Shown here piece by piece: positions 29,956 through 53,905 of a stretch of 64,000 nt of DNA. The DNA comes from Octopus sinensis (taxonomy: Eukaryota): assembly GCF_006345805.1 (NCBI RefSeq), contig NC_043016.1, positions 31,434,001-31,498,000 on the forward strand. Reading direction: 5' to 3'. Numbering within the stretch: the first letter of the stretch is position 1; each line of letters begins with the position of its first letter. Below the pieces are notes generated by a model, which saw nothing but the letters and a program-made list of their open reading frames with translations, did not search any database and had not been told where the DNA came from. The translations under genes and the position numbers were made by a program.

Positions 29956-30533
29956 TTATCCCTGTCTCCTATTATTTTTAATAAGAGCATTCCTCCGTTT
30001 ATGATATCCATTCTTGTTCCACATTTTCATATTTCTTGAATGCATTGAATTTCCACCTCTCATCATTTTATTAGGCATTCTTGGTCTTACAACTCTATCC
30101 ATTTTATTCATTCTATTCATTCTAGTCTTTCTATTCATTCTATTCATTCTATTAATTCTATTCTTTCTATGCATTCTATTCATTTTATTAACTTTCCCTC
30201 CTTTATTTCGGCTCTGCCACATTTTATTATATCTTGATCGTCTACGTTTTGGTTGGGCATTTCTTTGGAAAGATTGTTGTCTTCTGACTGGACGTCGTCT
30301 ACCTCTAGCATAATCAGCATTTGTTTTCTTCACCTTTTTTTCATCTTTATCAGGTTCACTGCTTTCCTTTTTTATGGCAGTGTTCTCTTCAGCCTCTTTA
30401 GCAGGAGCTTTTTTGGCATCTGGAGATTCAGCCACTTCCTTTTCAACTTCTTCTTCAACTTCATTTTCCATTTCATTTTCAACTTCGTTGTCATCTGAAG
30501 CTTCAGATTGCTGACCACTGGCTAGATGTTGTA
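29956..30533 (-). CDS. Coding exon 3 of an uncharacterised secreted charge-block protein (207-aa precursor)
   Basis: Strong acceptor (long polypyrimidine tract ...catgctgtttttcag|TACAAC at 30534/30533), phase 1. Open frame (V)QHLASGQQSEASDDNEVENEMENEVEEEVEKE...KNNRRQG to TAA at 29958-29956. Extends the 171-aa ORF-track entry 29956..30471. Confidence 0.88.
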
Positions 30534-30965
30534 CTGAAAAACAGCATGGAAATGATAAGTAAAAAGAAAAAAAGAATTAAGAAGAAGTTACATGCAATTA
30601 TTTCATGACATCAGCGAAATATAATTTTCTTCATTCAGTTTGCCTTGAATAACTTGCTTCTAAAATAGGAACTTGTTCATTATTGAGAATTTGTTTCTTT
30701 AAACACTGTACTTTTATACTAAGCAGTATGGAGCTAAGGGATACAACTCAAATAAGCTAATGGCATGAATGAAGACAGATCAAATTGATGTTGTTTTACT
30801 GAATGGCATATGAAAAACATTTCTGATGAACTTTTTGTTGAGGGGTGAGGGGTGGGGAAATTAAAAACATAAAACAAATTACTAAAACAGCACTAGTGGT
30901 AATTTTAGCTCTAACCATCCCACCAAAACAGATCAGCTTTTCCATTTCATCATTAGAAAAATCAG

Positions 30966-31188
30966 CCCTTTAGCATTCAAATCACTCTATCAAATCACTC
31001 TAATGCTTATTTATTCACTTGATTTGAATTAATCATGCATTATCCCATAGCTTTGAGATTTCAATGATGTGATGGTTTAGTTTTAGAATGACATTGTAGG
31101 GTTGGTGTGAGAGGCTGAATCTGGTCAGTTGGAGCACAAAACAGGTTGAAGATTTTGGCTGGATATGACCAATTTAAATGCTAAAGAG
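30966..31188. mobile_element. Second piggyBac-type MITE family
   Basis: CCCTTTAGCATT...AATGCTAAAGAG|TTAA. A fragment of the same family is near 24835-24900. Confidence 0.55.
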
Positions 31189-31757
31189 TTAAAAACATTC
31201 ACCTTCTCAACTTCTTGAAATTATCACCCTTTTCTTGTGTGTGTCACCAACTGTTACTGCCATGTTTTTATTTTTGTTTCTCTAACCAAGAGAGACATTT
31301 CATTTCATCAACTCATTATTAATTTATTATTTAAGTCCTTCAGTACATCAACACCTATTCTATTTATACTTGCTCGTTTCATTCCTTGGACAGCAACCCT
31401 GCTGTGGTATTGCCTTTAAGAGCTTCAGTTGATCATATCAACTTTACTTCACTACCTCAGTCTGGAATCTATTTCATTGATCCATTTTTGTCAAATCCCT
31501 ATGCTATGAGAATAAAGAGATGTAACTCAAAAACAACAACTGTTTTTATAACAGTGTCAATGTAAACAATTTGAGCGTCAATACACATTCACAAATTAGT
31601 GGCAATCCCTCAAGATCGAGAATGATTCATTCCAACCATTATTTTCTTCTGTTATTTATTCCATGGACTTCAAAGATAACTACAATTACATTCTTGGTGA
31701 CCTGGCATCTATGAAGAGTGTTAGACAGAGATGCCTGCTTTTCCAAGTTTCCATTAA

Positions 31758-31977
31758 CTCTTTCATTACTGTATTTATTTTGAGATGCTCTGTATTTCTT
31801 TCAATTACTTTAAATATAACAAAGAATTTAGTAAAATAACTTAGCTATCATTAAGCTAGTGTTAGGAACATAAATTGCTACTAAGGTTTGGTGGAAGATC
31901 TTTATTCAAAACTTATGAAAACAAGACATTTGTACTCAGAGCCAGAGCCAGTTTCAGCCAGGTTGGTAACGAAAGGG
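31758..31977. mobile_element. piggyBac-type MITE, inverted relative to 10140-10349
   Basis: TTAA on both sides, ends GGTAACGAAAGGG, internal homology to the first copy. Confidence 0.8.
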
Positions 31978-33731
31978 TTAAATACATTTTTGAACTACTT
32001 CTTTTGTGTACTTCTCATGTGTACTTTACTTCAATCAGTTGTGAATGTAACAGATGTCTGTGCAACAGTTTTTGGACAGCTGCTGGTTCATCTGCCACCC
32101 TCATGACATAGATGACTCATCAAAACCGAAGTCATGTAATGATAGTGAAGAGTGCAACTTCTCTTTACTCTTTTACTCTTTTACTTGTTTCAGTCATTTG
32201 ACTGCAGCCATGCTGGTGCACCGCCTTTAATCGAGCAACCCGACCCCGGGACTTATTCTTTGTAAGCCCAGTACTTATTCTATCGGTCTCTTTTGCCGAA
32301 CCGCTAAGTGACGGGGACATAAACACACCAGCATCGGTTGTCAAGCAATGCTAGGGGGACAAACACAGACACACAAACACACACATATATACATATACAC
32401 GACAGGCGTCTTTCAGTTTCCGTCTACCAAATCCACTTACAAGGCTTTGGTCGGCCTGAGGCTATAGCAGAAGACACTTGTCCAAGGTGCCACGCAGTGG
32501 GATTGAACCCGGAACCATGTGGTTAGTAAGCAAGCTACTTCCCACACAGCCACTCCTGCGCCTATCAACAATTTTTCTGATATGCCTTTTGATAATGATT
32601 TGATCCAATCAATACTTGTTATTTTCCCTACACAGTTTGATGGAACATCACCATCACCTTCAAGGGTTTAATCAAACGAATTAGTCCCCCAGTATTTATT
32701 TTTTAAGTTTGGTATTTTATTCTAGCAGTCTTTCCTGCTGAACTGCTAAGTTATGAGGATTTAAACAAGCCAACGATGGTTATCAAGTGAGGATGTGATG
32801 GAGAGGTGAAAACAAACACAAAAACATGCACACAGACACTCACTCACACGCACATATTGCAGGCTTTCACATAGTCCCTTTTATAAAATTCAAGGCATAG
32901 CAGAAGATACTTGCCCAAGGTACTGTGCAGTGAGACTGAACCCAAAACCATGTGGTTACAAGATGAGCTTCTTAACTATTCAATTTTGTCTCCACTTATT
33001 CAAATGCCTGTATCTTGTACAAAAAGACCAAAATATTCTCTTGATTGTTTGGCTTAAACATCATTATCATAATCATCATCATCATTTAGCATCTGTTGTC
33101 CATGTTGGCATGGGCTGGACGGTTTGACCAGGGCTGGCAAATTGGAAAGCTGCACCAGACTCCAGTCTGATTTGGCATGGTTTCTACAGCTGGATGCCCT
33201 TTCTAACATTAACCACTCCGAGAGTGTAATGGGTGGTTTTATGCACCACCAGGACAGGTGCCATTTGCGTGGTATCTGCCACAACTGTGCTTTTATTTGG
33301 CTTGATGGATCTGTTTCTCCAGCACAACATAATGCCAAAGGTCTTGGTCATTGCCTTCCGTGAGGCTCAAAAGGTGTTTTTCATGTGCCACCAGCATCAG
33401 CCACCTTGCCTCCATGAGGCCCAACACTCAAAAGACACTCTGTACATGCCACCAGCATAGGTGCCAATTACGTGACACCAGCATCAGCTACAAATACAAT
33501 GCTACCAAACTCTGAAATTTCATTGGGTCTAGTTGCTGAGATCAGCTATTTTCAGGTGTTTGGAATGGTTAGTTTTAGTAAGTTTGAGCATTTCAAAGTT
33601 GATTTATAGCCCTTTCATTAATATAAAAGGGTCTTTATTCTGCTTTTAACAAGAGGCAGATATTAATGTAATGAATACAAGACAAATGAAGTTATAAACT
33701 CCTACAAATATATAATGACTGAGAAACATGT

Positions 33732-33775
<44 letters not shown>

Positions 33776-33994
33776 CCATTCAGTCATTCATAATTCTTCT
33801 TTCTACTATAGTCTTGAAGTTTTTGTGGGATAGGGCTAGTCGATTACATTGGCCCCAGTGCTCAGTTGATACTCATTTTATTAACCTGAAAAGGATGAAT
33901 GGCAAGGTTTGTCCTTTTCAGATTGATACTTATTCATTCATATTAACACTATTAAAATAATGTCTCTATGGATTTTATGGGTTATGTTTTATAT

Positions 33995-34760
33995 CAGGGG
34001 TTCTCAACCATTTTTTATCTATGGACCCCTTTGATTATTATTTTATTCTGATGTATTCCCATAGCCATTCAATGTTTAAAAACTAGTTTGATAGAAATAC
34101 ACTTCTTTTAAAATTCCTATTTTGTTTTTCACACATTAAGTTGTGTAGGTTAAACTTTGTAAAATGTTAGAGAACGAAACCTAACTGTTTCTTGTAATAC
34201 ATACTCCAATACATACATCTAAAGCAGGGGCTCTCAACTATTTTTTATTTATGAACTCCGTTGATTACTATTCTATTATGGTGGATCCCATAGCCATCTG
34301 ATGTTTAAAAACTAGTTTTATAGAAATTTCTTTTAAAATTCCTATTTTGTTTTTCACACATCAACTTGCATAGGTTAAACTTTGTAAAATGTTAGAGAAA
34401 GAAACCTAGCTGTTTCTTGCAATAATACATAGCATTAAATACATATAATGCCAGGAATGTCTGCCATTTTTCATCTATGGATATTATTTTATTTTGGTGA
34501 ACCCCCATAGCCATCCAATGTTTAAGAAGTAGTTTTATAGAAATTTCTTTCAAAATTCCTATTTTGTTTATCACACATTAACTTGTATAGATTGAAGTAT
34601 GTCAAATGCTAGAGAAAGAAACCTAGATGTTCCTTGCAATACATACCAATACATACATCTAAAGCTAATTTTAAAAAAATACTATTGTGGATCTCCAATT
34701 TACTATTTTGTTGCATGGACTCCCACAAAATCTTATATGGACCCCAGTTAAGAACCACTG
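33995..34760. mobile_element. hAT-like MITE with an internally triplicated unit of about 215 bp
   Basis: CAGGGGTTCTCAACC...GTTAAGAACCACTG, degenerate 8-bp TSD TTTTATAT/CTTTACAT, three copies of AAACTAGTTT.ATAGAAAT...AATACATAC. Confidence 0.8.
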
Positions 34761-36329
34761 CTTTACATGAATGTGTTAATTATTCTCATGAACAATCTTT
34801 TATTTAGATATTTTTGACTTCATTCATGTGCTTTATCTCATGGCATTTTTGCTCATGAGCATTCTTTGTAAATATGAAATGCTTTGTATGTAAATATCAA
34901 TTATTTCAGAATTTTATTTATTTTATTATTTTTGTTTAACTAATACAAATTATCATACAATATTAAACACATATTTATAATTATTAAAATGATTTTAATG
35001 CAGAATGAGAATATATTGGTAGGCTCAAGAATGCTTCAGATGTTCTACCACTGGATGTACCTGATTTTTGTCAGACATCTTTATTTCCAGTTTATGCCGC
35101 ATTTTCTATTCAAAAGGGTTTTTCAAGCCAATATTTACACGCTAGTATTCATAGCTTAATGTGCTTTGAGATCCACTGCTGATCTCTAATTGTAGAGGGA
35201 ACATGTGGAAGGAGTAGACCCAGGAAAATATGGGATGAAATGGTGAGAAAGGATCTACAGATGTTGGGGCTCACGTGGTGGGATGACAAGGTACTGAGAC
35301 ACCTGACGCTTTACTGTACTTAACAAAACATGCCCAACCAAGTAAAAGCATGGTTGTTCTTGCATACAAGTCTGTCTCCTGCATCTCTTTCCGGTTGAGT
35401 ATTCTTAATCTTGTGGGCTTGGGGGTGCTGGTGCCACATAAAAAGCACTTGTACTGGTGCTATGTAAATACACCAGTGCCAGAACTGTGTAAAAGCACCC
35501 GGTACACTCTGTAAAGTGGTTGGTGTTAGGAAGGGCATCCAGCCACAGAAACCATGCCAAACCAGAAGTGGAGCCTGGGCATCTCCTGTCAAACCATCCA
35601 ACTCATGCCAACATGGAAAATGGACATTAAATGGTGATGACAATGATATATATAAATATATATGTAATTGTTTAATAGTTCACAAATCTGAAAAAAATCA
35701 TTGTCTAAAATTTGGAGCAGTAATACTTAAAAGATTGTTGGTTATGGTTGGTCAGAGAGTGACCATTGGTTTCACACCTATAAGGTTTTTAGTGGTATAA
35801 ATGACTTGTCAGACTTGAAGGCTGGCCTGAGTTCCTGATCATTATCTGACTGCTAATATAAGAATATTGTTCTACTAATGTTGAGAGGTAGCCACACTCA
35901 TGCATCAACAAAAATTCTTGACAATATGTGTAGGTTTTAGAGCCATCTAGGAGAACAGGTAAAATACAACTGTCTTATATACAATAAGTTTGGTTGTTTA
36001 TTTCACATCGCCATCGTATATTTGGCTTTTCAGATGATTAAAGATTACACTGATACATTTTAACCACTGTGTGATCTTATTCATCAATATCCACATTCTA
36101 TGATAAAAGACAACCTAGTCATTGGGGATGCTTCACATTTTTCACTATTTGTTGATATATCTGGGTGGTTGGACTAAGTTCCTGATTATTATCTTACTGC
36201 TGATCCAAGAGTATTGTTCTACTAATGTTGATAGGTAACCAGACCCTTGCATCAACAAAAATGTCGGTAATTGGTTGTAGTTCTTTTGCTAAAATCTGAC
36301 TAACTCTGGTATTATCTGTGTATTAAAAT

Positions 36330-36530
36330 CCAAATAATCTTTGTTCTGGCTTAGAGTCTGACGAAGTTGAGTGGTTTGCCATCTGTCTGTGCAATATGAA
36401 ATATGGACATCAGGAAAGAGTTTACACTCAAACTTGGTCTCAAGTTTATGCATAGCTATGAGGAAAATAGAAAAGAGAGTAGTGACTATAACACACATCT
36501 GCTTAACTTCAGTTCTCACTTCAAACTGAT
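36330..36530 (-). pseudogene. RTE/BovB-like RT fragment
   Basis: RTEVKQMCVIVTTLFSIFL...HISYCTD corresponds to GVKQGCV.APTLFSIF...I.YRTD. Confidence 0.65.
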
Positions 36531-37149
36531 TTGTTGTGAAAATCTTATTCTTAAGCTTTTAACTTCCCATGAAGCATAGGTTATTGATGTTTTTCCTTCA
36601 CTGTTCTTGACTCAGAGCTATCTTTTCAGTTCCTTTCCAGTTGGATCCCTGCTTTTTCAGTCTCTCTTCCATCTCCCTTGTGGGTTCTGTCCCCTCTTGT
36701 GCATCAAGCATATGTTTCCTAAAGGCCTTCCTCTTCCAGGTCTTGATATTAAATTGTCATTGATGCTTCTGTAACTTTGCTTTTTTATCCAAGTAGGAAT
36801 GTTGGCTGTACAAAAACCCATTTTTATCTCTGGGAAGAGGTGGTCTGTATTAGTCTGGTCTCTATCCTTTGGCCTGTCCAGCACTAGAAGCTCTGTCAGG
36901 GATGTGTGCTCTGCTGGTGCAGTTCTCAGGGTCATTAAGGTACAAAAGCTACCATACTGCAGCAAAGACTAGAGCTGATGGGGGTTTGTGAAAAACTCAC
37001 TATACTTATTTCATGTTATCATGTAGATGTCGGGTAACTGACATGGTTATGACTTGATGCAAGATTGGTTACAGTGACCAATGATGAAACAATTGCAAAC
37101 AATGAACGAAAATGATTTTCTAACTACACTCTTTGGTATATGTTATTTA

Positions 37150-37197
<48 letters not shown>

Positions 37198-37340
37198 ACG
37201 TGTGTGTGTGTGAGGAAAAACATTAGAAAATTTCTTGCTCTTAATCTTTGAAAATCCCCTTTCTTTTCTACTTCAAGGGTTATAGGTGATCCAGTGAGCA
37301 GTGAAAGGAAAAAAATTTAAGTGAATAAAAAGAGTATTAC

Positions 37341-37386
37341 CTGATAAAATAAAACATAGTGCCAGCAATATATATATTGCTCTCAT
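37341..37386 (-). CDS. Coding part of exon 2: signal peptide MRAIYILLALCFILS(G)
   Basis: ATG at 37386 (A at -3), 15 codons plus 1 nt, then donor GTAATA. Phase 1 matches exon 3, giving MRAIYILLALCFILSVQHLASG|QQSE with an A-x-G cleavage motif. Exon acceptor tattttccag|G at 37439/37438, so the whole exon is 37438-37341. Confidence 0.85.
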
Positions 37387-38599
37387 CTTCTCTTTTTTTA
37401 TTTTCTTTCCTCAGAAATCACAATAAAATGTATTTAACCTGGAAAATATACAATTAAAGTAAAACTTATCAGTAGACAGAGAAATAATTTCGTGGCATAC
37501 AGTAATCTTGTGATTGAAGTTCTTAACCATTCGACAAACAGGGATCAAATAAATGAGTAATTAGTAATGTCGATTTTTGCCAATTTTTTTGCAGATTCAT
37601 ATTCCCTGTAGCGGAAAAGGGGTGTTTGTGCTGAAAAAAATTTTTAAGGGTGGTTTTTGTGGGGGGAGAGGACGGGCAGAAGTCTTCCCCCCCCCCCCAA
37701 GTTTTGGGCCTTATGCCTAGAGAGGAAAAGATTATATTTTTTAATTCTCCTGGTGTGAAATGTCTTTTTGATTCCTTCTTCAAAATACAATCTATTTAAG
37801 TATTACCAAATAAAGTTTTCATTGGGTTACTGTTAAAAAGAACTAAAACTGCCTAAAAAATATCTGCTCTCAATATTTGGCAGGTAGACAACAGTTAAAA
37901 AGAGGCTCATTTCACAAACTTTAAAAATTTTATTTATAAACATATTTTCACATCCAAAATTGCTAATACACACATTTATAATGGCAGATTAAGCAATACA
38001 AGAAAAAAATATATAAACTAGAAAAGCACTCGGAGAGCGCAGACCTTCGCCAAGCAGCTCATTTCAGCTCATATACACACATGCTGAAAATTGCCCAATT
38101 TCCTAAACCAACACCAGCAAAAACATAACCTCCTTGGCGGGGTTAAAAAAAAACACAGCCATACTGATACTATTTTATCCTCCTCCCATACTTATCTCGA
38201 CCATCATCATCATCAACACTGTCTCTGTCTTCACCACAATTACCGTCAAAACTACGATCACCACAATCAGTTTCTCTACACAGTTGAAAATCCATTATCC
38301 GATACTCATGGGACCGAGATTGTTGCAGATTTTTGATTTTTCTAATTTCGGATTGCTTTATTAAAACCAGGTCTAACTAAACACAATAGCTTATAGATAT
38401 ACTCTGAATGTAGTTCTATATAAATCTCTAATATTTTTTTTAATACTTAAGACCATCAGAAATGTTAAGATATCAGCCTCTACCTATGTTGTCATGCTTT
38501 GATTAAAAGGTTACAGCACAGATTAGATTACTTAGATAAGTTTCGGCCAAAGTTGACTCAGGCTATGTCTAATTTAATAGCACCACCTGGAAGTGATAC

Positions 38600-39000
38600 A
38601 CAGTCAGCTCTGGGGAAGCGTAGCCCATTCAAGCAGAGAGTTATTGTTTTCAGAGACATATCAGAGTGTCGGTGGTTTATCTGGTATTTGTTGTGGGTAA
38701 TCATCTAGGGATCGTTTGGATACTGTGTAGTCACTTTCCTCCTTTATGTGTGTCTGGCACGATGTTGAAGAGAACAGGGCCAATTGAGGTGAAGTAGTTC
38801 TGTCATAGTGTTGTGAGATGACACGAACATTTCTGTAGTGGATGGATGGTATGGGGGCCAAGCCTCGGACGAATTTTAAAGATGGGTAATGTTGATGGAA
38901 TATTTTCCACATAATACAGATGATATAGAGCTCACAGTGGTGGTGGAGGGAGCAAAGCCTGAGCTTTTTGAGTCGATCCCAATAGTCAAGGCTTGTCATG
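38600..39000 (-). pseudogene. CR1/L2-type LINE C-terminal fragment
   Basis: LDYWDRLKKLRLCSL...YIICIMWKI...KRSLDDY.QQIPDKP. Confidence 0.7.
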
Positions 39001-39369
39001 TCATCCTCCGCAGACTTCCGCCAAGCAGCTCATTTTAAGATAGATACACGAGTAAAATGACTAACAGAGAAACGAAAAATAAACTTTTGAAACAGCAACG
39101 CCACCATAGGTTACATGAAAACGATGAACGTGTTTTCAAGGGAGATAATCAAAGAACGTAACATTGTAATACTTCATGTAAAGTAAATATAACAAATGAA
39201 AAATCCTTCAAGAATCCATTAAATTCCTGGATTACTACCAAAATTTCATCATCTACCACTGCGTGGCACCTTGGGCAAGTGTCTTCTACTATAGCCTGAG
39301 GCAGACCAAAGCCTTGTGAGTGGATTTGGTAGACAGAAACTGAAAGAAGCCTGTAATCTATGTATGCGC

Positions 39370-39400
<31 letters not shown>

Positions 39401-39869: not shown

Positions 39870-41113
39870 CGAGGGGCGTTCAATAAGTAATGCCCCTGAC
39901 CCACTTCCCATAGCAGAAGAGCAACGACACTTGGCACAGTTATTAGTCTTTTCCTACATAGGAACTACCCAGAGTTTGATACAGCTCTGGAGACCGCTTT
40001 TGTAGAAGACCCCAGCTTGGTCCTCCAACCACAACGTGACTTCAGAAATCAAGGCTGCATCATCTGGGAAACGCTTTCCTTTCAAAATCAACGTCATGGC
40101 TGGGAAGAGGTGAAAATCAAAGGGTGCAAGGGGAGGAGTTCATAGCTGCATGCCTGTGCTTCTGATCTGGCGACACGCGAGTTGTGGACAGGAGTGTTGT
40201 TTTGCAGGAGGAGGATGCCTTTGCTGATCTTGCCCCGCCTCTTGATTTTGATAGCTTCTCTTAATTTCCTCAAAAGTGAAGCATAATAGGCTCCTGTAAT
40301 TGTGGTACCCTTTGCCAGGAAATCTGTCATCACTACTCCGTCCTGGTCCCAGAAGACTGTGAGCATAACCTTGTCAGCGGAGGGCTGCACCCTTGCCTTC
40401 TTTTGAGGGGGTGAGTCACGGTGCTTCCACTGCATTGACTGCGCTTTGGTCTATGGATCATAGTGATGGACCCAGGTTTTATCCTGTGTGATCAGTCTTT
40501 TGAAAAATTTTGACTCATCTTCTTGGCACATCTCCAAATTCATCCTCGAGCACTCAACGCGTTCTTGCTTCTGGAAAGCAACCTGGAAATCCATCTGGCA
40601 GACACCTTTTGCATACGCAAATGGTCATGAATGATAGTTTCCACAGACCCGGTACTAATCTTGACCTTATGGGCTATTTGGCGAATAGTTATGCGTTGAC
40701 CTTTCAAAATGGCAGCCTCAACTTGACGGACAGACGTCTCATCAACGGCAGAAGGGGGCGACCAGATCTGGGAGCTGTTTCCACAGAGTTCCGACAATGT
40801 TTGAATTCCCAATGCCAGCGTTTTACAAGGTCATATGATGGGGCATCATCACCATAAGTTACTTTCATTTCATCAAAAGTCTCCCGTGGTGTGCGTCCTT
40901 TCAAATACAAAAACCAGATCACTGCTCGACACTCAACAGGCTCCATTTCACACTTGACTCAGTTCAAACACCTGTAAATCAGAAACCACAATTAGTTCAG
41001 AGCTGTAATTCGCCACTTAATCTATAGAGGTATAAATAAGTGCACATGCAAAATTTCAGCTAGATCAAACAAATGCAAGTGGGTCAGGGGCATTACTTAT
41101 TGAACGCCCCTCG
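39870..41113 (-). mobile_element. Near full-length mariner (irritans/Hsmar2-like), 1244 bp, decayed
   Basis: Perfect 37-bp TIRs CGAGGGGCGTTCAATAAGTAATGCCCCTGACCCACTT, TA TSD, inserted into a family A SINE head. Confidence 0.95.
39960..40946 (-). pseudogene. Mariner transposase pseudogene
   Basis: MEPVECRAVIWFLYLKG...PRSGRP...KVSARWISRLL...ITQDKTWVHHYDP*...KVMLTVFWD...LLQNNTPVH, split over three frames with a stop, substituted catalytic residues and a 3' deletion. Confidence 0.95.
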
Positions 41114-41459: not shown

Positions 41460-41509
<50 letters not shown>

Positions 41510-44320: not shown

Positions 44321-44999
44321 AGGTTATGAATGAGACATGACAAAAATTGCTTTATAGAAAGTTGAAATATATAATATTGTTATATTGTGCTACTGTGTGT
44401 TCAATATGAATACTAAAGCTGCAAGACAAAAATTAATAATCACCAGAGAAAATTCAGTTTCTGTAGTATGTGTATGCCAAGCAATATGCGCTCAAGCACG
44501 TGCCAACATGTATGAAATGTTATGCAAAACAGAGCAAAAATAAAGTCAGAAAAAAAAACTATTTGAAAGGAAAAAAAGCATGCCGTGTAAGGAGAAAAAC
44601 AAAGAAGAAAATAAAGAAAAAAAATGTTCAAATATATTATCTGTTAATTCTGTTTTTGGAATATCTCAAAGCTCAAACATAAAGCATGTAATGATAAGCA
44701 TGTAAATACTGAGTTAAAAAAACCCTTTTGGATAGAAAAAGTCAAAGGCTGTCTGTGAGCCTTTTTTTTTCTGAAAAGAGATTTTACACAAGATATTTAC
44801 AAGCTATTACTTATAGCTTTATGTTTGTGCTTTAAGGTATTTCAAAGAAAGAATTAGTTGACATTCACTTAAAAGCTTGTAACATTCTTATGATATCAAT
44901 GAGATATCATCAGTTGATATTGAAGTAAGAATAGAAATAATTACAGGAGTATCAAATTGCTGGATCAGGTGATGAAAATTTCGGTGAGAGTCAGAGCCC

Positions 45000-46690
45000 A
45001 ACTAATTAGGGAGGAAGAGAGTTAGCTTAGATGAGATGCAGTTTGGTTTCGTGCCAGGGAGAAGCACCACTGATGCTATATTTCTGGTAAGGCAGCTGCA
45101 GGAGAAATACATAACCAAAGATAAACCTCTGTACTTGGCCTTTGTTGACTTGGAGAAAGCCTTTGACAGGATACCCTGGTCCCTTATCAGGTGGTCAATG
45201 CAGAAACTAGGTATAGACAAGTGGTTTGTGAGAGCTGTACAAGCTATGTACAGGGATGCAACCAGTAAGATAAGGGTTGGCAATGAGTACAGCGAAGAAT
45301 TCAGGGCACAAGTAGGGGTTCACCAAGGATCAGTGCTCAGCCCCCTTTTGTTCATCATAGTCCTCCAGGCAATAACAGAGAGATTCAAGACAGGCTGCCC
45401 CTGTGAACTACTCTATGATGATGACCTTGCTCTTAGGCTGAATCACTACCTGAACTAGAGGTATGGAAGCAAGGTCTAGAATGGAAGGACCTTAGAGTTA
45501 GCCTAGCAAAACCCAAGGTATTAGTAAAAAGGAAGGCAGACGAATTTCAAATCCCATCAGGTAGATAGCCCTGCTCGATCTGTAGAAAAGGCATAGGTAG
45601 AAACTCTATAAGATGCACCTGGTGTAAGCTTTGCACACATAAAAGGTGCAGCAATATCAGAGGAAGGTTAACAGAGTAACTAGCTTTGTATGTGGAAGAT
45701 GTACAGGTACAATAAACGCTGAAAATGGGCAGAAAATAAACTCCATCAACTGCCAGTGGGGCAAGCTAGAGGTAGTAGATAGCTTCCGTTATCTAGGTGA
45801 CCAAGTTAGTAGTGAAGGCAGATGCTCCAAGAGTGTAACTGTGAGAATAAGATTAGGATGGACAAAGTTCAGAGAGCTCCTACCCCTGCTGGCAACAAAG
45901 GGTCTCTCTCTCAGGGTGACAGGCGGATTGTTTGATGCCTATGTGTGAACAACTATGTTGCATGGCAGTGAAATTTGGGCTGTGACAGCCGAGGACATGT
46001 AGGCTTAAAAGAAATAAAGGCAGTATGCATGTTTGACAGAGTGTAAGCATCTTGAGAGAAAAGTTAGGCATAAGAGACAACTGCACTGGTATGGTCATAT
46101 GATGTGTATGAATGAGGACAACTGTGTAAAGAAGTGCTGATCTCTAACTGTGGAGGGAACCTGTGGTAGAAGTAGACCCAGGAAGATATGGAATGAGGTG
46201 GTGAAGCATAATCTTCAAACTTTGAGCCTCACAGAGGCAATGACTTGTGACCGAGACCTTTGATGATGTGCTGTACTTGAGAGGACCTGTCAAGCCAAGT
46301 GCACCTGTGCTGGTGACATGTAAAGAACACCTTTTGAGCATTGGACTTCACAGAAGCAAAGTGGCTGAGTTTCTTTCGAGTGTTTGGCCTCATGGAGGCA
46401 ATGACCAAGACGTTTGGCATTATGTCATGCTTGAGAAGACCTATCAAGCCTAGCAAAGTCACAGTTGTGGAAGATATCGGTGCCACACAAATGGCACCTG
46501 TGCCGGTGGCATGTAAAAGCACCCATTACACTCTCGGAGTGGTTGGCATTAGGAAGGGCATCCTGTTGTTGAAAACCAAGCCAAATCAGACTGGAGTCTG
46601 GTGCAGCCTTCCAGTGTGCCAGCTCGATTAAACCATTCAACCCATGCCAGCATGGACAACAGACGTTAAATGATGATGATGATGATGAAT
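45000..46690 (+). mobile_element. 5'-truncated RTE LINE, same family as 4181-7827
   Basis: MQFGFVPGRSTTDAIF...GVHQGSVLSP...LYDDD, FVCGRC, YLGDQVSS, then a 3'UTR and (GAT)n tail. Multiple frameshifts. Confidence 0.92.
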
Positions 46691-48131
46691 TGGTGCCAAA
46701 AAAAGATTCATGAAATGTAAAAAGGAAATTGTGCTAGAATTCATGGAGGTAAGTTCAAAGACAGAGATGCCAGTATTCCACTCTAGTTGGAGATTGGTCT
46801 CCTTTCATGGAGGCAAAATGTCCAAGTACATGAAACAGAAGAATGCTGTAATTGGTCAATGGTGCTCGTTTTTGATTTAATAGATTTGTACATGGCAAAA
46901 GAAAGCTTTCACATGATGCTCTTTTATATCTCATTAACGAAAGAGATTTGCAAGAGTTGAAGTACAGGATTTATCAGGATTGTTGATTGCAGCACTTGGT
47001 TTGTTTCTCTCACTTAGCCAACTAAGTTTCCATATTTTTTCATGTTTTCAACGTCAAGATTCATCACATGTTGTGTGATTTAGGTCATACATTCTATTGA
47101 ACTTAAGCAACAGTTGTATTTCTCAGTAAGTTGTTTATTGTTTTCTTCTAGTGGAAGAAGAGATCATAAAATGTATTTCATAGCAGGGTGTATATGTGTT
47201 CAATGTCAGTGTTATTGTTCTTTTATTTAGAGAGATAGAAAAACACTTGTCTCCACTACATATAAAATTTCAATTCTTTCAAATTTTCTCAGCAAGTCAT
47301 CTGTTATATTGAGGCAATTTTTTTTGTGTAATAGCTTTGGCTTACCTCACGTTCTGCTGTTAGCTTGGTACTATGTGATGTCCATAATTGATAACAATAG
47401 TCTAGATGGCTGACAAATATGATTTCCTCTTCTCTTGTTCTGAATGATCTTGGAATTCAGCCAACCTGTTACTTGTTTATTGTTGGTATCTTTACAATAA
47501 ATATACGGAATAATGCCAGCATAATAAAGTAGATGTAAAAATACTGTTTCAATACCCAATCATAATGCTGTAGTAGCTGTGTTTAATGGCTTCTTTCTAA
47601 AGGGAAGTTGTGCTGAATGTAATTTGTAAAATCATTGAAAATTTGTTCCATGATTTTTCAGCTATTTGAAGTCAAAAAGATAGACCAGCCATTTTTATCT
47701 TCTGCTCTGCTTTGTCCATATTTTCTTTTAACTTTATGGGAGTTTCTCACTAGCAAGGGAACTGAAAATGTATCAGCAGCAGTTTCACTAGTCTTTTTTT
47801 TCATGTCTTTAGTAGAATTACCAGAATTGTCAAGAAACTGTCATGGTCTGTTGCTGAGATCCAACGAACTCCATTTATGATTGACTTTATATTTTCTTTC
47901 TTCATGTTGATGTAATCAATGGCTGTCACTTGCCTCTGGCTTTTTTATTTATATATCTCCAAGAAAAGAAGTGAAAACAATTTTTGAATTGTTCACTCAG
48001 GGAGGTCTTCTGAAAGCAGTTCACTTATCCATAAGAACTTTACAGTCAGTGAGCTATTTTCTTTCTACAGTGGCACTACTCTGTAATCACTGCAACTGAC
48101 TCTTGCAATTTTGTCTGCTGTTTATATTAGT

Positions 48132-48364
48132 CAAACTGATGTCTTCATCTCAACTGTTGGTTTCACTACGTTTTGGTTGTTGTATGCTCCAGCCTTCTTC
48201 AGGTGTCTTGTGTAGAACTTGCCCATTATATCTGAATTTTGAAATAGGTAGATGTTTGAAATTCTGATACAATAACTGAGTTCAACAGAAGACACTTGAA
48301 TAAGGCTGGAACCTACACCAACCAAAACGTGGTGAAAGCAACAACCAAGATGAGGACACCAGTT
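48132..48364. repeat. Inverted pair of decayed Penelope-type tails
   Basis: Arms of about 78 bp (48132-48209 and 48289-48364), each with a CTGAAGA/TTGAATA-AGGCTGG...AAAAC hammerhead relic. Confidence 0.7.
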
Positions 48365-48424
48365 CAACTAATATGAAGAATAGGCTTAATATAAATTCTT
48401 CATCTCAGAAATATATTGATAGAA

Positions 48425-49246
48425 TTATATGACTTGTAAATTTATAGAAAACCTCAGTAATTGTTTTTCAGCTTTGGATGTAGGTATTTTCTTTGTTGTT
48501 ATTCTGTTCCAGATCGTTCTGGCCACTGCATCATGCCTCATGGGAAGATAATATCTAGAAGACATTCTCTCACAGCTGGCAATAATGTGGTTGATGTCTT
48601 CACTCTTGGCTTTGCACAGCCTACATTTGTTGTCTGTCATTGTTTTCTGCCTCTTAAGTGGTAGGTACTCTAAAGTGGTCGGTACTTGGTGAGTGGTAAG
48701 TAATCATAAGTGGTAGGTACTTGGTTAGAAGGTCTTGTTCTTGAATAGTATGGAGGTAGCCTTTGAAGTGGAATGTCATAAACTTGTCAGTACTTCATAC
48801 TAAGCTCTTGACTTGATCAGTACCTTCTATGATTTGTACCCATGAAATAACTTCCCAGTGAACAAGTCCATTTTCTTTTTATTTTGCTCTTCCAATAAAC
48901 AGAATATACCAATGCTGTTTGAGGAGAGACCAATATCATTTCCTATTTCATCCCTCTCCTCAAGTTCACTACCTATCCTAATGATACTGTTTTCATGCTT
49001 ACAAATTAGGTAAGATAGTTATTGGTCTCCTTTTCCCCTGCTGCAGATGTTGTTTTAGTGTCACGATATGTGCTGCTTCATATGACATCAATACAGATTT
49101 GAGACCATGTCTACCATGCTTGCGTGAGAAGTACAACCTGACTACATCTCCATTGGTGTTGAAGTTTCTCATATCATTGAGTAACTTGTGAGTTTGGACA
49201 TCTGTCTCATTGAGTTCCTGTAGTGACCAGTTCAGAAGGCCAAATG

Positions 49247-49250
<4 letters not shown>
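48425..49250 (-). pseudogene. R4/NeSL-type (RLE) non-LTR relic
   Basis: [15 protein letters not shown]...GDVVRLYFSRKHG.HGL and the CCHC knuckle CRLCKAKSEDINHIIASC...RHDAVA. Confidence 0.85.
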
Positions 49251-49278
<28 letters not shown>

Positions 49279-51337
49279 TGTATGTATGTATGTATGTATG
49301 TATGTATGTATGTATGTATATATGTACGTACGTATGTATGTATGTGTGTGTATATGTGTGTATTCACATACATAAACATACATATACATACATGCATACA
49401 TACACGCACACACACATACATACATATGTATGTACGTATGTGCATGCATCCATAAATACTAACATACACACATACATATGGAAAGAACTTTTGAGTGGCA
49501 TACAGTCCCTAACTCATCAAAGAGTGCAGTTACTCTGAATAAGAATTGATTTTTGCCAGTGACAAGATCCAAAGACTTTGCAGATCCAAAGACTAAAATT
49601 ACACAAACTTGTAGAATCTTTTTGGAAAGGAGTTAACAGAAAGTGCCTGCTTTCTATTCAAAGGATTTCCAGTTTATATTGCACTGGCTTTTGTGGTGTT
49701 GTATACTTCCTTACAAGAAGACTTAGATTGCATAAATAATAAAACTACTTAACTCTCATAAGTTTAATCAATCTTTACAATGCACCCTAAGAAATACTGC
49801 AAATAGAAGATGGACCTATGTATAAAAGATGAAAAATTTAGTTAATCCTCAGTGATGCTCTTGGGAGGATGTGATGAAAGCTACAAAAACTGTTGACAAA
49901 CATTAAATGAAACTAAAATGACTTTTGAAACTTTTTTTAGCTTATCTAACACCTTGATGAAGAAAGAAAAATTTTTTGGATGTGAAATCTATGAGATGCA
50001 GCACAGAATTTTGTCAGTGAACAGGTCACAGTCTCAAAGTGATGAAAATATTTAAAATTAAATTTAAATGTTGAAGTGAATCTAATGGTTTTTGTGTGTT
50101 TTTAAATGGCTTATAAGCACCTTCCACACTGCAATTGCCTTTGTTTCAGCGCACAGTCTCAGATCAGGTCACTTGCTATGCAAGTACATCTCCGAAATCT
50201 ATATTGTAATCACATTAATAAAGAAGGGATTGGGTAAAAAATGTCCCTATGGTGAACCTGATATTTGTCTGTTTTAGAGCCACTGACTGACAGTGCCACA
50301 AATATTCAAAGAATTTACTGAGGAGATATTTTTTCCTTCAGGTATCATTATCTAAGCCAAGGGTTCCTAAACTTACTTTCTTATGGAACCCTTGTACTAT
50401 TTTCCAAAAATCTCATGGAATCAGTCTTCAATCTTTTATCTTTCTTCAATCATTGGATTGCGGCCATATTGGGCACTGCCTTGAAGGGTTATAGTTGAAT
50501 GAATTGGTCTCAGGACTTATTTTGTTTTAAGCCTGATACTTACTCTACTGGTCTCTTTTGCCAAACCACTAAGTTACAGGGATGTAAATAAACAAATATC
50601 AGTTGTCAAGTGGATGTGAAGGACAGCTACAAACATAAAGACTTACACACACATACAGTGGCTTGGGAATAAAATTTGCTTAGGGGCTGCAAACTCAAGT
50701 CCAGAGTTTTTTTTTTACAAACAAGGTTTTTTTCCCTTTTTTCTTTTTTTTTTCAGAAGAAATCTGACTTCAAGCTAAGTTCTATGAGCAGTTTTAATGC
50801 CAGAGCGGATATTGACTAAGACTCCTGGCCAGGCTACCTGAGAAAGTCATGGATTAGTAGCATAAATGACAATGAGGAATGATTGCTTGACCTTTGCACA
50901 CTCTATAGATTGTGTGTCACCATCCCTTTTTATGCATGTTTTCTAAACCTGAGAAAAGTAAGTAGGGCTGCAAATTTTGATTCTGCAGCCTCCAAGAATT
51001 TTAGGAGGTGTGTTAGCACTCCATGCACCCTCTCTTCCTGGGATCATGCACACATAGACATATATATACATATGTATATATATTATTTCTTTATTACCCA
51101 CAAAGGGCTAAACAGAGGGGACAAACAAGAACAGATAGAGGGATTAAGTCGATTACATCGACCCCAGTTCGTAACTGTACTTAATTTATCGACCACGAAA
51201 GAATGAAAGGCAAAGTCGACATCAGCGGAATTTGAACTCAGAATGTAGCGGCAGACGAAATACTGCTAAGCAATTCGCCTGGTGTGCTAATGATTCTGCC
51301 AGCTTGCCACCTGTGTGTATATATATATATATATATA

Positions 51338-51436
<99 letters not shown>

Positions 51437-51574
51437 CTATATATATATATATATATATAATATATAATATATATATTATATATATATATTATATATATAT
51501 ATATGTATATATATATAGGGATATATATATATATATTATATATATATATGTATATATATATGTTATATATATAT

Positions 51575-52765
51575 ATATATATATTTGTAAAAAATGAAGT
51601 TCGAAAATGCTGCTGTATTATACAATTTTTAATTTTTATATATACATTATAACATGTTTCAGTTCCTGAAATGAACCTTATCAAAAAAAGTTATATATAA
51701 AAAGAGACAGCTCATGCCGTCAAAACACAGAAATTCATTTATAATACACAACGGAGTCAGACATCTTAGAGTTCATGTATAGTTGATATATAGTTCATGT
51801 ATAGTTGATATATAGTTTGAAGTAATGTTCAAAGTGTTCGATGCAGTGGCCCACGGTGGCGATACGTATTCAATACAAAAAACAGATCAAAGTGGTGGAA
51901 AGCGGTCAATACAGAAGATTGATGTTTTGCGAAAGAGCGAGGAATTCATTTTTTACCTTAAGCAATTGTGATGACCCATGGTGGAGTTCGCTGGGTGGTT
52001 CTAGTGAGTTTTTGTGAAATGCTCGGTTTTTAATGCCTGTTAGGTGGTCAATCTAGCGTAGCGTGACGTCATCAATGTTTTTGACCAATCGTTTCGTTAG
52101 GTGGCTTTAACCAAGTGGAACGGGACGTCATCATTATTTTGACCAATCGCTGCATTATAACTCCTCTTGTTTGTTTCCTGTCTTGACCAGTCGCTTCGTT
52201 AGTCAGGCATAGCGGGACGTCATCCAGATTCTGCCCAATCACGACTTATAGCTACATTAGATCTGCCCCCTGTCTGTACTTGTTAGGTGACTATTCAAGC
52301 AGAAAAGGACGTCATCAATATTCTGACTAATGACTGTCCCCTGTTTGTATCCTGTCCATTCTAGCAGAGCTAGCGTCATCAACTTGTTGACCAATCAGAA
52401 TCGGGTCTGACCCTTAGCTGTATCGTATGTATCAGGGTCAGATTTGCACGAAAAAATTTTTTTCCTTTTTTACTAAGGCATATTTCCGTCAGAGTGAGTG
52501 TCTGTTTGAAGTAGCGGCCGTGGTGAAATTTGGTTCTCCTTTTCGGAGGACTTATCTTTTGTTTTAGTATTCCTGCCCAGGGTGTTTAAACTTGTCAAAA
52601 TTTTTTTATGACATATAGTTCTTTATTTTGGCGTTGTGTGAATGTTGCGTTGTCACTGAATTTATATAGCGGGGTTAGTTGTAAATTTCGGATTTACATT
52701 TCCAGCACATCTATCTATGTGTCCGCTGACTGGTAATTTTGCGGTAATCAATATTTTGCGGTATA
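51575..52765 (-). mobile_element. Unclassified CpG-rich insert of about 1.2 kb between (TA)n tracts
   Basis: Decayed hammerhead-like tail at about 51655-51700 (TTGATAA GGTTC...GGAACT GAAAC ATGT), internal CRE/CCAAT repeats, no recognisable ORF. Confidence 0.45.
52064..52395 (+). promoter_or_regulatory. Array of five GACGTCA-N12/13-CCAAT composite motifs
   Basis: Units begin at 52064, 52124, 52216, 52308 and 52372. The spacer is 13, 12, 12, 12 and 12 nt while its sequence varies. Function is inferred only. Confidence 0.45.
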
Positions 52766-52802
52766 TATATATATATATATATATAAATATAGAGAGAGAG
52801 AG

Positions 52803-52885
<83 letters not shown>

Positions 52886-53836
52886 CATACATACTACATA
52901 CATACATACATAGACATGAACCAATGGTAATTTTCTGACTGGCCATAACCAATGATTACATAAAATATATATCTACAACACACACACACACACACACATG
53001 ATGGGCTTCTTTCAGTTTCCACCTACCAAATCCACTCTCAAAGCTTTGGCCCAGGACTGAAATAGAAGGCACTTGTCCAAAGTGTTGTGCAGTGAGGCAG
53101 AACCCAGAACCATTTGGTTAGGAAGCAAACTTCTTATTACACAACCATGCCTGTGTCTATATTTTATGGACAACCCTAGCATTCTAATTTTAATAAAACA
53201 AAAATGAAAACAGAAATTGTTTAAAAGACAGAATTTGTTCATATATATATATAAATGTATAACTTATTAATTTCAAATTAAAAGGTTAATACCATTTTTA
53301 GAATTTTTATTAAATTCTGTTAAAATATCTATCTCATGAAATGCTAGAATGTTTTACAAAATCCAAGGGTTCTTCAGAACTGTATTTGGAAAATTCTAAT
53401 CTAAGTGATGTTTCAAAAACAGGTTCTTTACTCCAGAATGTGTTAAGTAGAATATAAGAAAAAAAGAATTTTTTGAGTTCAAAAGAGAACATAGAACTCC
53501 TAATTGCAACAACATTATTCACCAACAACCTAAGACTTGTTCCACATATTCTACAAGTAAACATTAAGATATTTTGAAGTTTGAAGTCATAAAGTGAAAG
53601 TTGGGTGAAAATCTTGGTAAAAATTTTAAAAAATTTTATGGTGCTTTTTAGAGCAGTAATCATAGGGTTGAAAGGAATAAAGGCTAAAGATGTTGAGAAG
53701 TGAGAAGACTAGCATTAAAACAATATTTATTCAACAACTGAACATAATCAGCAAGACTTATAATTAAACCTGGAAAATAAGAAGACAAACTATCCATAGT
53801 AAGCGAGGAGCAATGTCAATAGTAGCTATTCCTTAC

Positions 53837-53873
53837 CTTGTGGATCTGCACGGCTGGAACAATATTTTTAAGT
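53837..53873 (-). other. Predicted non-coding exon 1 (37 nt) of the secreted-protein gene
   Basis: ACTTAAAAATATTGTTCCAGCCGTGCAGATCCACAAG|GTAAGG: consensus donor, no upstream ATG, starts at an Inr-like TCACTT. Its link to exon 2 across 16.4 kb is inferred. Confidence 0.6.
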
Positions 53874-53905
53874 GATCAAAATATCTTCCCCATTTGCTAT
53901 ATATA
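53870..53905 (-). promoter_or_regulatory. TATA box plus initiator core promoter
   Basis: TATATATAG at 53905-53897 lies 30-32 nt upstream of the A (53873) of TCACTT, followed 37 nt later by a splice donor. Confidence 0.6.

What the first reader, a model, noticed from the sequence alone, without database searches (positions are those of the whole stretch)
29956..53905. Orphan secreted charge-block protein gene hidden across 24 kb of transposon debris
Seen in the sequence: TATA-Inr, a 37-nt UTR exon, a phase-1 signal-peptide exon and a 578-nt coding exon join into a 207-aa ORF that the ORF track shows only in truncated form. After a 22-aa signal peptide (ASG|QQ, possible pyroGlu) come an acidic block (14 D/E in the first 30 residues), a Lys/Glu/Ala linker, YARGRRR, and a 116-aa tail with 42 K/R, 1 Asp, 19 Asn and 14 Met, ending in Gly. 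There is no Cys in the mature chain. Established knowledge: RxRR is a furin-type site, C-terminal Gly is the amidation donor, and acidic pro-pieces neutralise cationic peptides in many secreted precursors. Inference: a lineage-specific precursor releasing a very basic effector or structural polymer (antimicrobial, adhesive/coacervate, egg-case, spermatophore, mucus or salivary component). I cannot assign it to a known family.
Basis: partly seen in the sequence, partly recalled or inferred. Interest (0 to 1): 0.85.

Follow-up and report, generated by a model that had tools for sequence, protein, structure and literature searches.

The report
Octopus secreted acid-then-base repeat protein gene
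The window holds a real-looking Octopus vulgaris gene for a small secreted, disordered protein with an acidic front and a very basic Asn/Met/Arg repeat tail. Its front half is already in the public annotation as a hypothetical protein, it is an ordinary kind of mollusc gene, and its function is unknown.

Summary
The 207-aa spliced ORF is present as described, with canonical GT/AG sites, a phase-1 junction and every residue count confirmed. It is not a chance ORF: it runs 191 open codons against a maximum of 119 in 5000 shuffles.

The DNA is Octopus vulgaris. The gene is not hidden. Public model CAI9734433.1 (114 aa, "Hypothetical predicted protein") uses the same start codon and the same 37341/30533 junction. 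It then leaves exon 3 at an internal donor (30303) for a 22-codon exon 20.5 kb downstream (9729-9662), so the basic tail is missing from it.

The tail frame is open far beyond chance (P about 1e-3 to 1e-4), which favours it being coding. No RNA data could be reached to settle the 3' end. The 5' UTR exon at 53837-53905 is only a plausible guess.

No homologue, Pfam family or solved structure was found, but two controls show the searchable databases cover cephalopods poorly, so "orphan" is not established. The furin, amidation and antimicrobial readings rest on motifs only.

Best reading: a lineage-restricted, repeat-built secreted polyampholyte. This kind of gene is common in molluscs. Interest is modest.

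The parts
37341..37438 (-). Exon with 52 nt of 5' UTR and the first 46 nt of CDS (ATG at 37386-37384). It encodes MRAIYILLALCFILS plus the first base of the Val16 codon, which is the signal-peptide core. Acceptor is ttttccag| at 37439-37440 and donor is CAG|GTAATA.
   Evidence: in-frame TGA upstream of the ATG. The public protein P0001/CAI9734433.1 is 100% identical here.
30304..30533 (-). First part of exon 3: the end of the signal peptide (cleavage predicted at ASG|QQ), the acidic block and the Lys/Glu/Ala linker up to ...DYAR. It contains a 12-nt in-frame tandem repeat (30434-30486, ENEV/ENEM units).
   Evidence: Identical to residues 16-92 of the public model.
30301..30303 (-). Internal donor used by the public gene model (AGAG|GTAGAC). 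The last exon base is 30303 and the GT is 30302-30301. If it is skipped, the same three bases are read as Gly93 (GGT) and the frame continues into the basic tail.
   Evidence: plus direct reading of the sequence.
29956..30303 (-). Basic tail CDS (Gly93..Gly207 plus TAA at 29958-29956). It is R/K/N/M-rich with pI 12. It includes the 9-nt in-frame repeat ATGAATAGA (MNR) x 10.7 at 30094-30189, flanked by degenerate N-[RK]-M triplets.
   Evidence: The open frame is improbable by chance, with P = 1.5e-3 (flanks shuffled) to 1e-4 (whole tail shuffled). This tail is absent from every database searched.
9662..9729 (-). Alternative terminal coding exon of the public model (DQAEFSSIVKFAFLCSRIIDKE, stop TAG at 9664-9662), behind the acceptor ttatacttcag|. 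Its 22 codons are about what chance gives and show no sign of coding constraint.
53837..53905 (-). It is unverified.
   Evidence: It is one of three strict donors on this strand. The TATA motif is too common to be informative.
29483..29646 (-). Candidate polyadenylation signals for the long-exon isoform: ATTAAA at 29646-29641 and AATAAA repeats at 29492-29483, which lie 310-470 nt past the stop codon.
   Evidence: from sequence reading only. Their use is inferred.
30534..37340 (-). Intron 2 (6.8 kb). It carries interspersed repeats, a 217-bp x 3 tandem array (33995-34665) and microsatellites.

Best explanation
This is a genuine Octopus vulgaris gene, apparently restricted to its lineage. It encodes a small, cysteine-free, intrinsically disordered secreted polyampholyte, built largely by in-frame tandem-repeat expansion.

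The 207-aa product has three parts:
- a cleavable signal peptide (residues 1-22);
- an acidic segment of 69 residues (net charge -13);
- a tail of 116 residues (net charge +41), made of degenerate N-[R/K]-M triplets.

Most likely mode of action (inferred, not shown): after entering the secretory pathway, the polycationic tail acts electrostatically on extracellular polyanions. Candidates are microbial surfaces, sulphated mucus or matrix, and nucleic acids. The acidic segment would mask the tail intramolecularly during transport, or serve as a removable pro-piece cut at RGRR(92-95).

Whether the tail is made depends on an internal donor at 30303. If that donor is skipped, the 207-aa protein results. 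If it is used, as in the public model, only the acidic half plus 22 unrelated residues is made.

Shown: the gene structure, the signal-peptide-like N-terminus, the charge blocks, the repeat origin and an open frame beyond chance.
Inferred: secretion, processing, tail translation and any activity.
For: - The spliced ORF has canonical sites.
- The public O. vulgaris model independently uses the same ATG and the same 37341/30533 junction. That annotation pipeline combined Iso-Seq and RNA-seq with ab initio prediction on a repeat-masked assembly (PMC10700109).
- The ORF reaches 191 codons, against a maximum of 119 in 5000 shuffles.
- The tail frame has 0 internal stops, against 9 and 24 in the other two frames. 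P(no stop) is 1e-4 to 1.5e-3.
- Both internal repeat arrays have periods that are multiples of three.
- The N-terminal h-region has a mean Kyte-Doolittle value of 2.8, and A-x-G precedes the predicted cleavage site.
- Charge segregation exceeds all 3000 shuffles.
- AlphaFold2 gives no globular fold: pTM 0.24, with only the signal-peptide helix and a helix over the repeat modelled with confidence.
- Lineage-specific secreted proteins with repetitive low-complexity domains are a documented, abundant class in molluscs (PMC5400390).
- Precursors with an anionic N-terminal part and a cationic C-terminal part are known among invertebrate host-defence peptides, for example Hydra periculin-1 (PMC11767717).
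Against: - The only public model omits the tail. No 207-aa or 171-aa form exists in about 15 billion proteins.
- No transcript, proteomic or cross-species evidence could be reached.
- The tail is extremely hydrophilic. Its hydrophobic moment is near zero at 100 degrees (0.045) and peaks only at 120 degrees, reflecting the 3-residue repeat. It therefore does not resemble classical amphipathic helical antimicrobial peptides.
- Eleven R-x-x-R sites argue against clean convertase release of one product.
- The acidic block (-13) cannot neutralise the tail (+41).
- Signal-peptide prediction here is heuristic, because SignalP was not available.
Confidence: 0.5

Rival explanations
1. The public 114-aa model is the true and only product. 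It would be a small acidic secreted protein, and the basic tail would be intronic sequence whose open frame is a by-product of a purine-rich, T-poor composition and a 9-nt microsatellite.
For: - CAI9734433.1 splices at 30303 to 9729 through a good acceptor.
- The annotation pipeline used Iso-Seq and RNA-seq junctions. A 20.5-kb intron to a 22-codon exon is not what an ab initio predictor would favour without hints.
- Only one isoform is present in the databases.
- Microsatellite-driven ORFs of 150-420 codons occur elsewhere in this window.
Against: - The 82 non-repeat tail codons are also stop-free, where 5.8 stops are expected (P = 1.5e-3).
- The internal donor GAG|GTAGAC lacks the +5 G and is weaker than the other donors of the gene.
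- The 22-codon alternative exon shows no coding signature.
- Ab initio prediction in that pipeline ran on a repeat-masked assembly. That would mask the MNR array and force a model to leave the exon early.
Confidence: 0.27
2. It is not a protein-coding gene. It would be a chance combination of a hydrophobic mini-ORF, splice-like sites and a low-complexity open frame, and the public model would be an ab initio false positive.
For: - No homologue was found anywhere and no domain.
- The sequence is repeat-rich and low-complexity.
- There is no expression evidence in hand.
Against: - The ORF far exceeds the shuffles.
- The phase is compatible across a 6.8-kb intron with good splice sites.
- The N-terminus looks like a textbook signal peptide.
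- All exons are unique sequence, not transposon-derived.
- A second, independent pipeline chose the same start codon and junction.
Confidence: 0.1
3. It is a prohormone or neuropeptide-type precursor that is cut at its many basic sites into short peptides. The C-terminal one would be amidated through the final Gly.
For: - The layout is signal peptide, acidic spacer, then many di- and tribasic sites: RRR, RR, KRRR, KRR and RR.
- The protein ends in Gly.
- The mature chain has no Cys.
Against: - No repeated peptide units are flanked by dibasic sites with Gly donors.
- The predicted fragments are heterogeneous.
- The MNR repeat would yield tri-residue fragments.
- No similarity to any neuropeptide family was found.
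Confidence: 0.06
4. It is a divergent reflectin-like Met/Arg/Asn-rich assembly protein.
For: - The tail is 12% Met, 25% Arg and 16% Asn.
- Residues 145-166 satisfy the relaxed reflectin-domain pattern [MZ(X)<=5]>=3 proposed in bioRxiv 10.64898/2026.04.14.718489.
Against: - The canonical motif [M/F]D(X)5MD(X)5MD(X)3-4 is absent.
- Alignment to the conserved N-terminal reflectin sequence scores no better than 32% of shuffled tails.
- The tail has 11% Lys, only 1.7% Tyr and 0.9% Asp.
- It has a signal peptide and an acidic block. From my own knowledge, reflectins have neither.
Confidence: 0.03

Closest known systems
Lineage-restricted molluscan secreted proteins with repetitive low-complexity domains (RLCD proteins, e.g. 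shematrins and KRMPs of pearl oysters; PMC5400390)
   Same: It has a signal peptide and no conserved domain. It is built from rapidly evolving in-frame tandem repeats. It has no detectable homologues and a strongly biased, charged composition.
   Different: Those families come from bivalve and gastropod mantle and are tied to shell formation. This is an octopus gene of unknown tissue. Its N-[R/K]-M repeat and its acid-then-base block order match no described RLCD family. No sequence relationship was found.
Host-defence precursors with an anionic N-terminal part and a cationic C-terminal part (Hydra periculin-1 and arminin; described in review PMC11767717)
   Same: The order is signal peptide, anionic N-terminal region, cationic C-terminal region. 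They are taxon-restricted genes. The arminin comparison, including C-terminal Gly amidation, rests on my own recollection, because the primary paper was not held.
   Different: The cationic parts there are short (about 30 aa) and either amphipathic or Cys-stabilised. Here the tail is 116 aa, almost devoid of bulky hydrophobic residues, repeat-based and not amphipathic as a helix. No activity data exist.
Molluscidins (mollusc gill antimicrobial peptides with repeated dibasic residues; PMC11767717)
   Same: They are highly basic, Cys-free, low-complexity mollusc peptides rich in dibasic pairs.
   Different: From my own knowledge, molluscidins are about 55-aa Lys/Ala-rich peptides. No Asn/Met/Arg triplet repeat and no acidic pro-region has been described for them. 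No sequence similarity was detected.
Reflectins (cephalopod Met/Arg-rich self-assembling proteins)
   Same: They are cephalopod-specific, Met-, Arg- and Asn-rich and disordered, with periodic Met-polar dipeptides. One stretch of the tail fits the relaxed 2026 domain pattern.
   Different: The canonical motif, the conserved N-terminal motif and the Tyr/Asp richness are all absent. The tail is Lys-rich. The protein has a signal peptide and an acidic block.

Membership tests
Secreted protein (classical signal peptide) | Positively charged n-region, hydrophobic h-region of 7-15 residues, and small residues at positions -3 and -1 of the cleavage site | tested here: met
   The sequence is M-R, then AIYILLALCFILSV (mean Kyte-Doolittle value 2.84), then QHL-A-S-G|QQ. 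AlphaFold2 models residues 2-25 as a confident helix. This is heuristic only, because SignalP was not available.
Molluscan lineage-restricted secreted RLCD proteins | A signal peptide plus a repetitive low-complexity domain, with no other conserved domain | tested here: met
   TRF finds in-frame arrays of 9 nt x 10.7 and 12 nt x 4.4 copies. Pfam gives nothing below E = 0.1.
Molluscan lineage-restricted secreted RLCD proteins | No detectable homologue outside a narrow lineage | tested here: inconclusive
   Only the O. vulgaris model was found. Controls show that cephalopod genomes are poorly represented in the searched collections.
Proprotein-convertase-processed precursor (furin type) | An R-x-[K/R]-R site between the pro-piece and the mature part, with the mature part otherwise spared | tested here: inconclusive
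   One strict site, RGRR, lies at residues 92-95, exactly at the acid/base boundary. There are also 11 R-x-x-R sites and 11 dibasic pairs inside the tail. Actual cleavage cannot be tested with these tools.
Amidated peptide precursor | A C-terminal Gly exposed as the amide donor, with an amidated product detected | not testable with these tools
   The protein ends ...RRQG*. A single terminal Gly is weak evidence, and mass spectrometry is needed.
Cationic amphipathic antimicrobial peptide | Amphipathic helix or sheet: a high hydrophobic moment at 100 or 160-180 degrees | tested here: not met
   The Eisenberg moment of the repeat core is 0.045 at 100 degrees and 0.17-0.25 at 160-180 degrees. It reaches 0.71 only at 120 degrees, the trivial 3-residue period.
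Reflectin | Canonical domain [M/F]D(X)5MD(X)5MD(X)3-4 | tested here: not met
   The regular-expression search found no hit. The motif definition is quoted from bioRxiv 10.64898/2026.04.14.718489.
Reflectin | Relaxed domain [MZ(X)<=5]>=3, with Z = D, S, Q, Y, N, F or H | tested here: met
   There is one match at residues 145-166, MNRMNRKTRMNRMNKMDRVVRP. The pattern is loose and is satisfied trivially by the MNR repeat.
Reflectin | Conserved N-terminal reflectin sequence (MMEPMSRMTMDFQGRYMDSQGRMV-like) | tested here: not met
   The best local alignment scores 23. Shuffled tails average 21.3 +/- 3.8, and 32% of them score as high or higher.

The most novel reading that the evidence does not exclude
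The 207-aa isoform is real and represents an undescribed kind of secreted, self-masking polycation. Its tail is a cysteine-free N-[R/K]-M triplet-repeat polymer, which parallels reflectin's Met/Arg chemistry but is exported. An internal splice donor would act as a switch between an acid-only product and an acid-plus-base product. That would let the animal tune an extracellular coacervate, adhesive or antimicrobial coat, for example on eggs, suckers or skin mucus.
Probability: 0.08. Interest if true: 0.6.

Novelty: new member of a known kind. Interest (0 to 1): 0.27.

Why it matters
If the long isoform is real, the public O. vulgaris model CAI9734433.1 has the wrong 3' end or lacks an alternative one, and it misses the protein's most distinctive half. 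That would be a concrete example of repeat masking, or of a minor splice form, truncating low-complexity secreted proteins in cephalopod annotations.

Biologically it would add one more taxon-restricted, repeat-born secreted protein to the cephalopod repertoire. Its charge architecture makes electrostatic functions directly testable: polyanion binding, self-coacervation and antimicrobial action.

It does not bear on any long-standing open question. Without expression data it remains a candidate.

Tried and rejected
- Exact look-up of the 207-aa and 171-aa products among about 15 billion proteins: both absent.
- Word-indexed homology search and full HMMER against 1.84 billion representatives: only the O. 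vulgaris 114-aa model was found.
- Pfam and PDB sequences: nothing meaningful.
- The look-up of encoding contigs for P0001: no record, so no genomic neighbour or orthologous locus could be fetched.
- Full-text literature search for the repeat string NRMNRMNR: 0 papers.
- AlphaFold2 with a single sequence gave pTM 0.24 and no fold. I did not run a Foldseek search, because a low-confidence model of isolated helices would give meaningless matches.
- The reflectin hypothesis was tested and rejected as membership. The attempt to fetch real reflectins for a profile comparison failed. The 24-aa motif was too short, and a 72-aa bait, of which only 24 aa were literature-verified and the flanks came from my own memory, found no candidates.
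- The control for database coverage used the window's LINE reverse transcriptase. Among the 120 best of its 2901 hits, identity was at most 77% and none was named as octopus. Absence of homologues is therefore weak evidence for orphan status.
- Rfam and tRNA scans of the window: empty.
- The viral, prokaryotic-genome and JGI metagenome collections were not scanned for this octopus gene, because they hold no cephalopod genomes.
- The primary arminin paper (PMC2786370) is not held.


Full report
**1. What is in the sequence**

On the minus strand, a 98-nt exon (37438..37341) carries an ATG at 37386. It is followed by 46 nt encoding MRAIYILLALCFILS plus one base, and it ends at the donor CAG|GTAATA. 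Behind a pyrimidine-rich acceptor (TGCTGTTTTTCAG|) at 30534, a 578-nt exon runs to a TAA at 29958-29956.

An in-frame TGA lies 30 nt upstream of the ATG inside the same exon, so the start codon does not depend on any upstream exon. The mechanical ORF list shows only the 171-aa truncation at 29956..30471.

- The 22-residue N-terminus has a hydrophobic core (mean Kyte-Doolittle value 2.84) and A-S-G before QQ.
- The first 30 mature residues hold 14 D/E (pI 4.05).
- The linker has net charge 0.
- The 116-residue tail has 42 K/R, 1 Asp, 19 Asn and 14 Met (pI 12.0).
- The mature chain has no Cys and ends in Gly.

**2. Is it more than chance**

Yes.
- The exon holds 191 consecutive open codons. In 5000 dinucleotide-preserving shuffles the mean was 48 and the maximum 119.
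- The coding frame has one stop (the terminal one), against 12 and 40 in the other two frames.
- Acidic and basic residues are segregated beyond every one of 3000 permutations. Kappa is about 0.31 against 0.17 +/- 0.03, and the Mann-Whitney P is 1.5e-9.

One caution applies. Part of the ORF is tandem repeat:
- ATGAATAGA (Met-Asn-Arg) x 10.7 at 30094-30189;
- a 12-nt Glu-Asn-Glu-Val unit x 4.4 at 30434-30486.

Only one of the three frames of the 9-nt unit is open. However, the 82 non-repeat codons of the tail are also stop-free, where 5.8 stops are expected (P = 1.5e-3; whole-tail shuffle P = 1e-4). Both repeat periods are multiples of three. Written in triplets, the tail is a degenerate N-[R/K]-M array over about 45 residues. 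It therefore looks like an old array that diverged while staying in frame.

**3. Source organism and what is already annotated**

The only database relative is P0001, which is CAI9734433.1 / A0AA36BHF0_OCTVU. It is a "Hypothetical predicted protein" of Octopus vulgaris, 114 aa long, on a 58.8-Mb chromosome. tBLASTn places it at 100% identity on three pieces of the window: 37386-37342, 30533-30304 and 9730-9665. The window is therefore O. vulgaris DNA and the gene is already annotated.

That is independent support for the gene and for the signal-peptide exon.

The two models then diverge. The public one leaves exon 3 at an internal donor (AGAG|GTAGAC, last exon base 30303). It joins an acceptor 20.5 kb downstream (ttatacttcag|, exon starting at 9729) and reads 22 further codons (DQAEFSSIVKFAFLCSRIIDKE) to a TAG at 9664-9662. 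The 207-aa and 171-aa forms are not among about 15 billion sequences.

**4. Which 3' end is right**

I could not reach any transcript data, so this stays open.

For the public model:
- The annotation used Iso-Seq, RNA-seq junctions, PASA/TransDecoder and EVM (PMC10700109).
- A 20-kb jump to a 22-codon exon is not what an ab initio predictor would normally choose unaided.

- The tail's open frame is improbable for intronic DNA.
- The internal donor lacks the +5 G and is the weakest donor of the locus.
- The alternative exon's 22 codons are about what chance gives.
- Ab initio prediction in that pipeline ran on a repeat-masked assembly. That would have masked the MNR array and pushed a model out of the exon early.

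Both forms may exist as splice isoforms. My estimates are:

| Claim | Probability |
|---|---|
| The locus is a real gene | about 0.9 |
| The 207-aa form is actually made | about 0.55-0.6 |

**5. The 5' exon and the "24 kb"**

The proposed non-coding exon ends at CAAG|GTAAGG (last base 53837). Strict MAG|GTRAG donors are rare. There are three on this strand, and two of them lie upstream of exon 2 (53837 and 44056). There are seven relaxed donors. The choice is therefore reasonable but not unique.

The TATA box carries no weight, because TATAWAW occurs about 546 times per strand in this (TA)n-rich window. A TATA-like TATATTTT sits just upstream of exon 2 as well. The secure extent is 37438..29956, or to 9662 under the public model.

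The "transposon debris" is real:
- RVT_1 fragments at 45036-45458(+), 6151-7353(-) and 57534-57872(+);
- a mariner Transposase_1 fragment at 40094-40435(-);
- a weak GIY-YIG match at 26195-26764(+);
- many microsatellites;
- 37% of the window is self-repeat.

All exons are unique within the window.

**6. What it is**

No Pfam family scored below E = 0.1, and the PDB search gave nothing. AlphaFold2 with a single sequence gives pTM 0.24. Only the signal-peptide helix and a helix over the MNR repeat (residues 129-164) are confident, and the rest is disordered.

The protein is best described as a small secreted, cysteine-free, intrinsically disordered polyampholyte born largely from in-frame repeat expansion. 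That is a well-documented kind of gene in molluscs. Lineage- or species-specific secreted proteins with repetitive low-complexity domains make up a large share of mantle secretomes and mostly lack any homologue (PMC5400390).

**7. How it most likely works (inference)**

The polycationic tail (+41) would act electrostatically on extracellular polyanions. The acidic segment (-13) would act as a partial intramolecular mask or as a pro-piece. The single strict convertase site, RGRR (92-95), lies exactly at the acid/base boundary.

The layout resembles Hydra periculin-1, which has an anionic N-terminal part and a cationic C-terminal part (PMC11767717). From my own recollection it also resembles arminin.

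Several points count against a classical antimicrobial peptide:
- The repeat core has essentially no helical amphipathicity. Its hydrophobic moment is 0.045 at 100 degrees, and it peaks only at the trivial 120 degrees.
- The tail is 116 aa long.
- Eleven R-x-x-R sites would shred it if convertases acted at minimal sites.

The amidation and pyroGlu readings are single-residue motif matches.

**8. Reflectin lead**

The Met/Arg/Asn composition suggested reflectins. Using the definitions quoted in bioRxiv 10.64898/2026.04.14.718489, the results were as follows:
- The canonical motif is absent.
- The relaxed pattern is met once, at residues 145-166, and trivially so because of the MNR repeat.
- Alignment to the conserved N-terminal reflectin sequence is no better than for shuffled tails (32% of shuffles score as high or higher).

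The composition also differs from that of reflectins: 11% Lys, 1.7% Tyr and 0.9% Asp. The signal peptide and the acidic block differ too. It is not a reflectin.

**9. Is it an orphan**

Nothing beyond the O. vulgaris model was found by the word-indexed search or by full HMMER against 1.84 billion representatives. Two controls show that the collections are thin on cephalopods:
- A reflectin bait retrieved nothing.
- The window's own LINE reverse transcriptase drew 2901 hits. Among the 120 best listed, identity was at most 77% and none was named as octopus, although sister-species copies should be far closer.

Logan-derived proteins appear among those hits, but at only 50-54% identity. Octopus sequencing runs are evidently not represented. 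Orphan status is therefore consistent with the data but not established.

**10. Verdict**

The gene is an ordinary representative of a known class (a taxon-restricted secreted low-complexity protein), and half of it is already annotated. The one useful specific result is the conflict over the 3' end: the public model probably truncates the protein or shows only one isoform. Interest is modest (0.27). No step needed referral.

Noticed in passing
window 6151-7353 (-): The longest clean ORF in the window (400 aa) is a LINE-type reverse transcriptase (RVT_1, E = 5.7e-31) with a weak, sub-threshold PHD/C1-like Cys-rich C-terminus. Its closest database relatives are only 50-64% identical and mostly unnamed ENA contigs. 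One 77%-identical hit is labelled as a Herbaspirillum MAG, which is probably eukaryotic contamination of that bin.
   Followed up: partly
window 45036-45948 (+) and 57534-57872 (+): Two further degraded copies of the same reverse-transcriptase family. One lies inside the proposed intron 1. The strict splice-donor matches at 6589(-) and 57692(+) fall inside this element's coding sequence (..SKVRVGNEY..), so they belong to the transposon and not to a gene.
   Followed up: partly
window 40094-40435 (-): A mariner-type transposase fragment (Pfam Transposase_1, E = 1.2e-23) on the same strand as the gene, inside the proposed intron 1.
   Followed up: no
window 26195-26764 (+): An ORF that begins in (ACAT)n/(CGTC)n microsatellites and runs into a weak GIY-YIG match (E = 6e-4, below the Pfam cut-off). 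It may be a Penelope-like element remnant.
   Followed up: no
window 54053-55543 (both strands): Very long microsatellites, (ACAT) x 106 and (ACC) x 145, create overlapping pseudo-ORFs of 135-221 aa on both strands. This shows that long ORFs in this window can be pure repeat artefacts.
   Followed up: yes
window 33995-34665 and 12374-12740: A 217-bp x 3 tandem array lies inside intron 2. A 185-bp x 2 direct duplication has a unit that recurs up to 10-11 times across the window, so it is SINE-like. Neither was classified.
   Followed up: no
window 4939-5334: A GC-rich (about 49%) block with nested 40-, 66- and 209-bp tandem repeats, much richer in G+C than the 37.6% window average.
   Followed up: no
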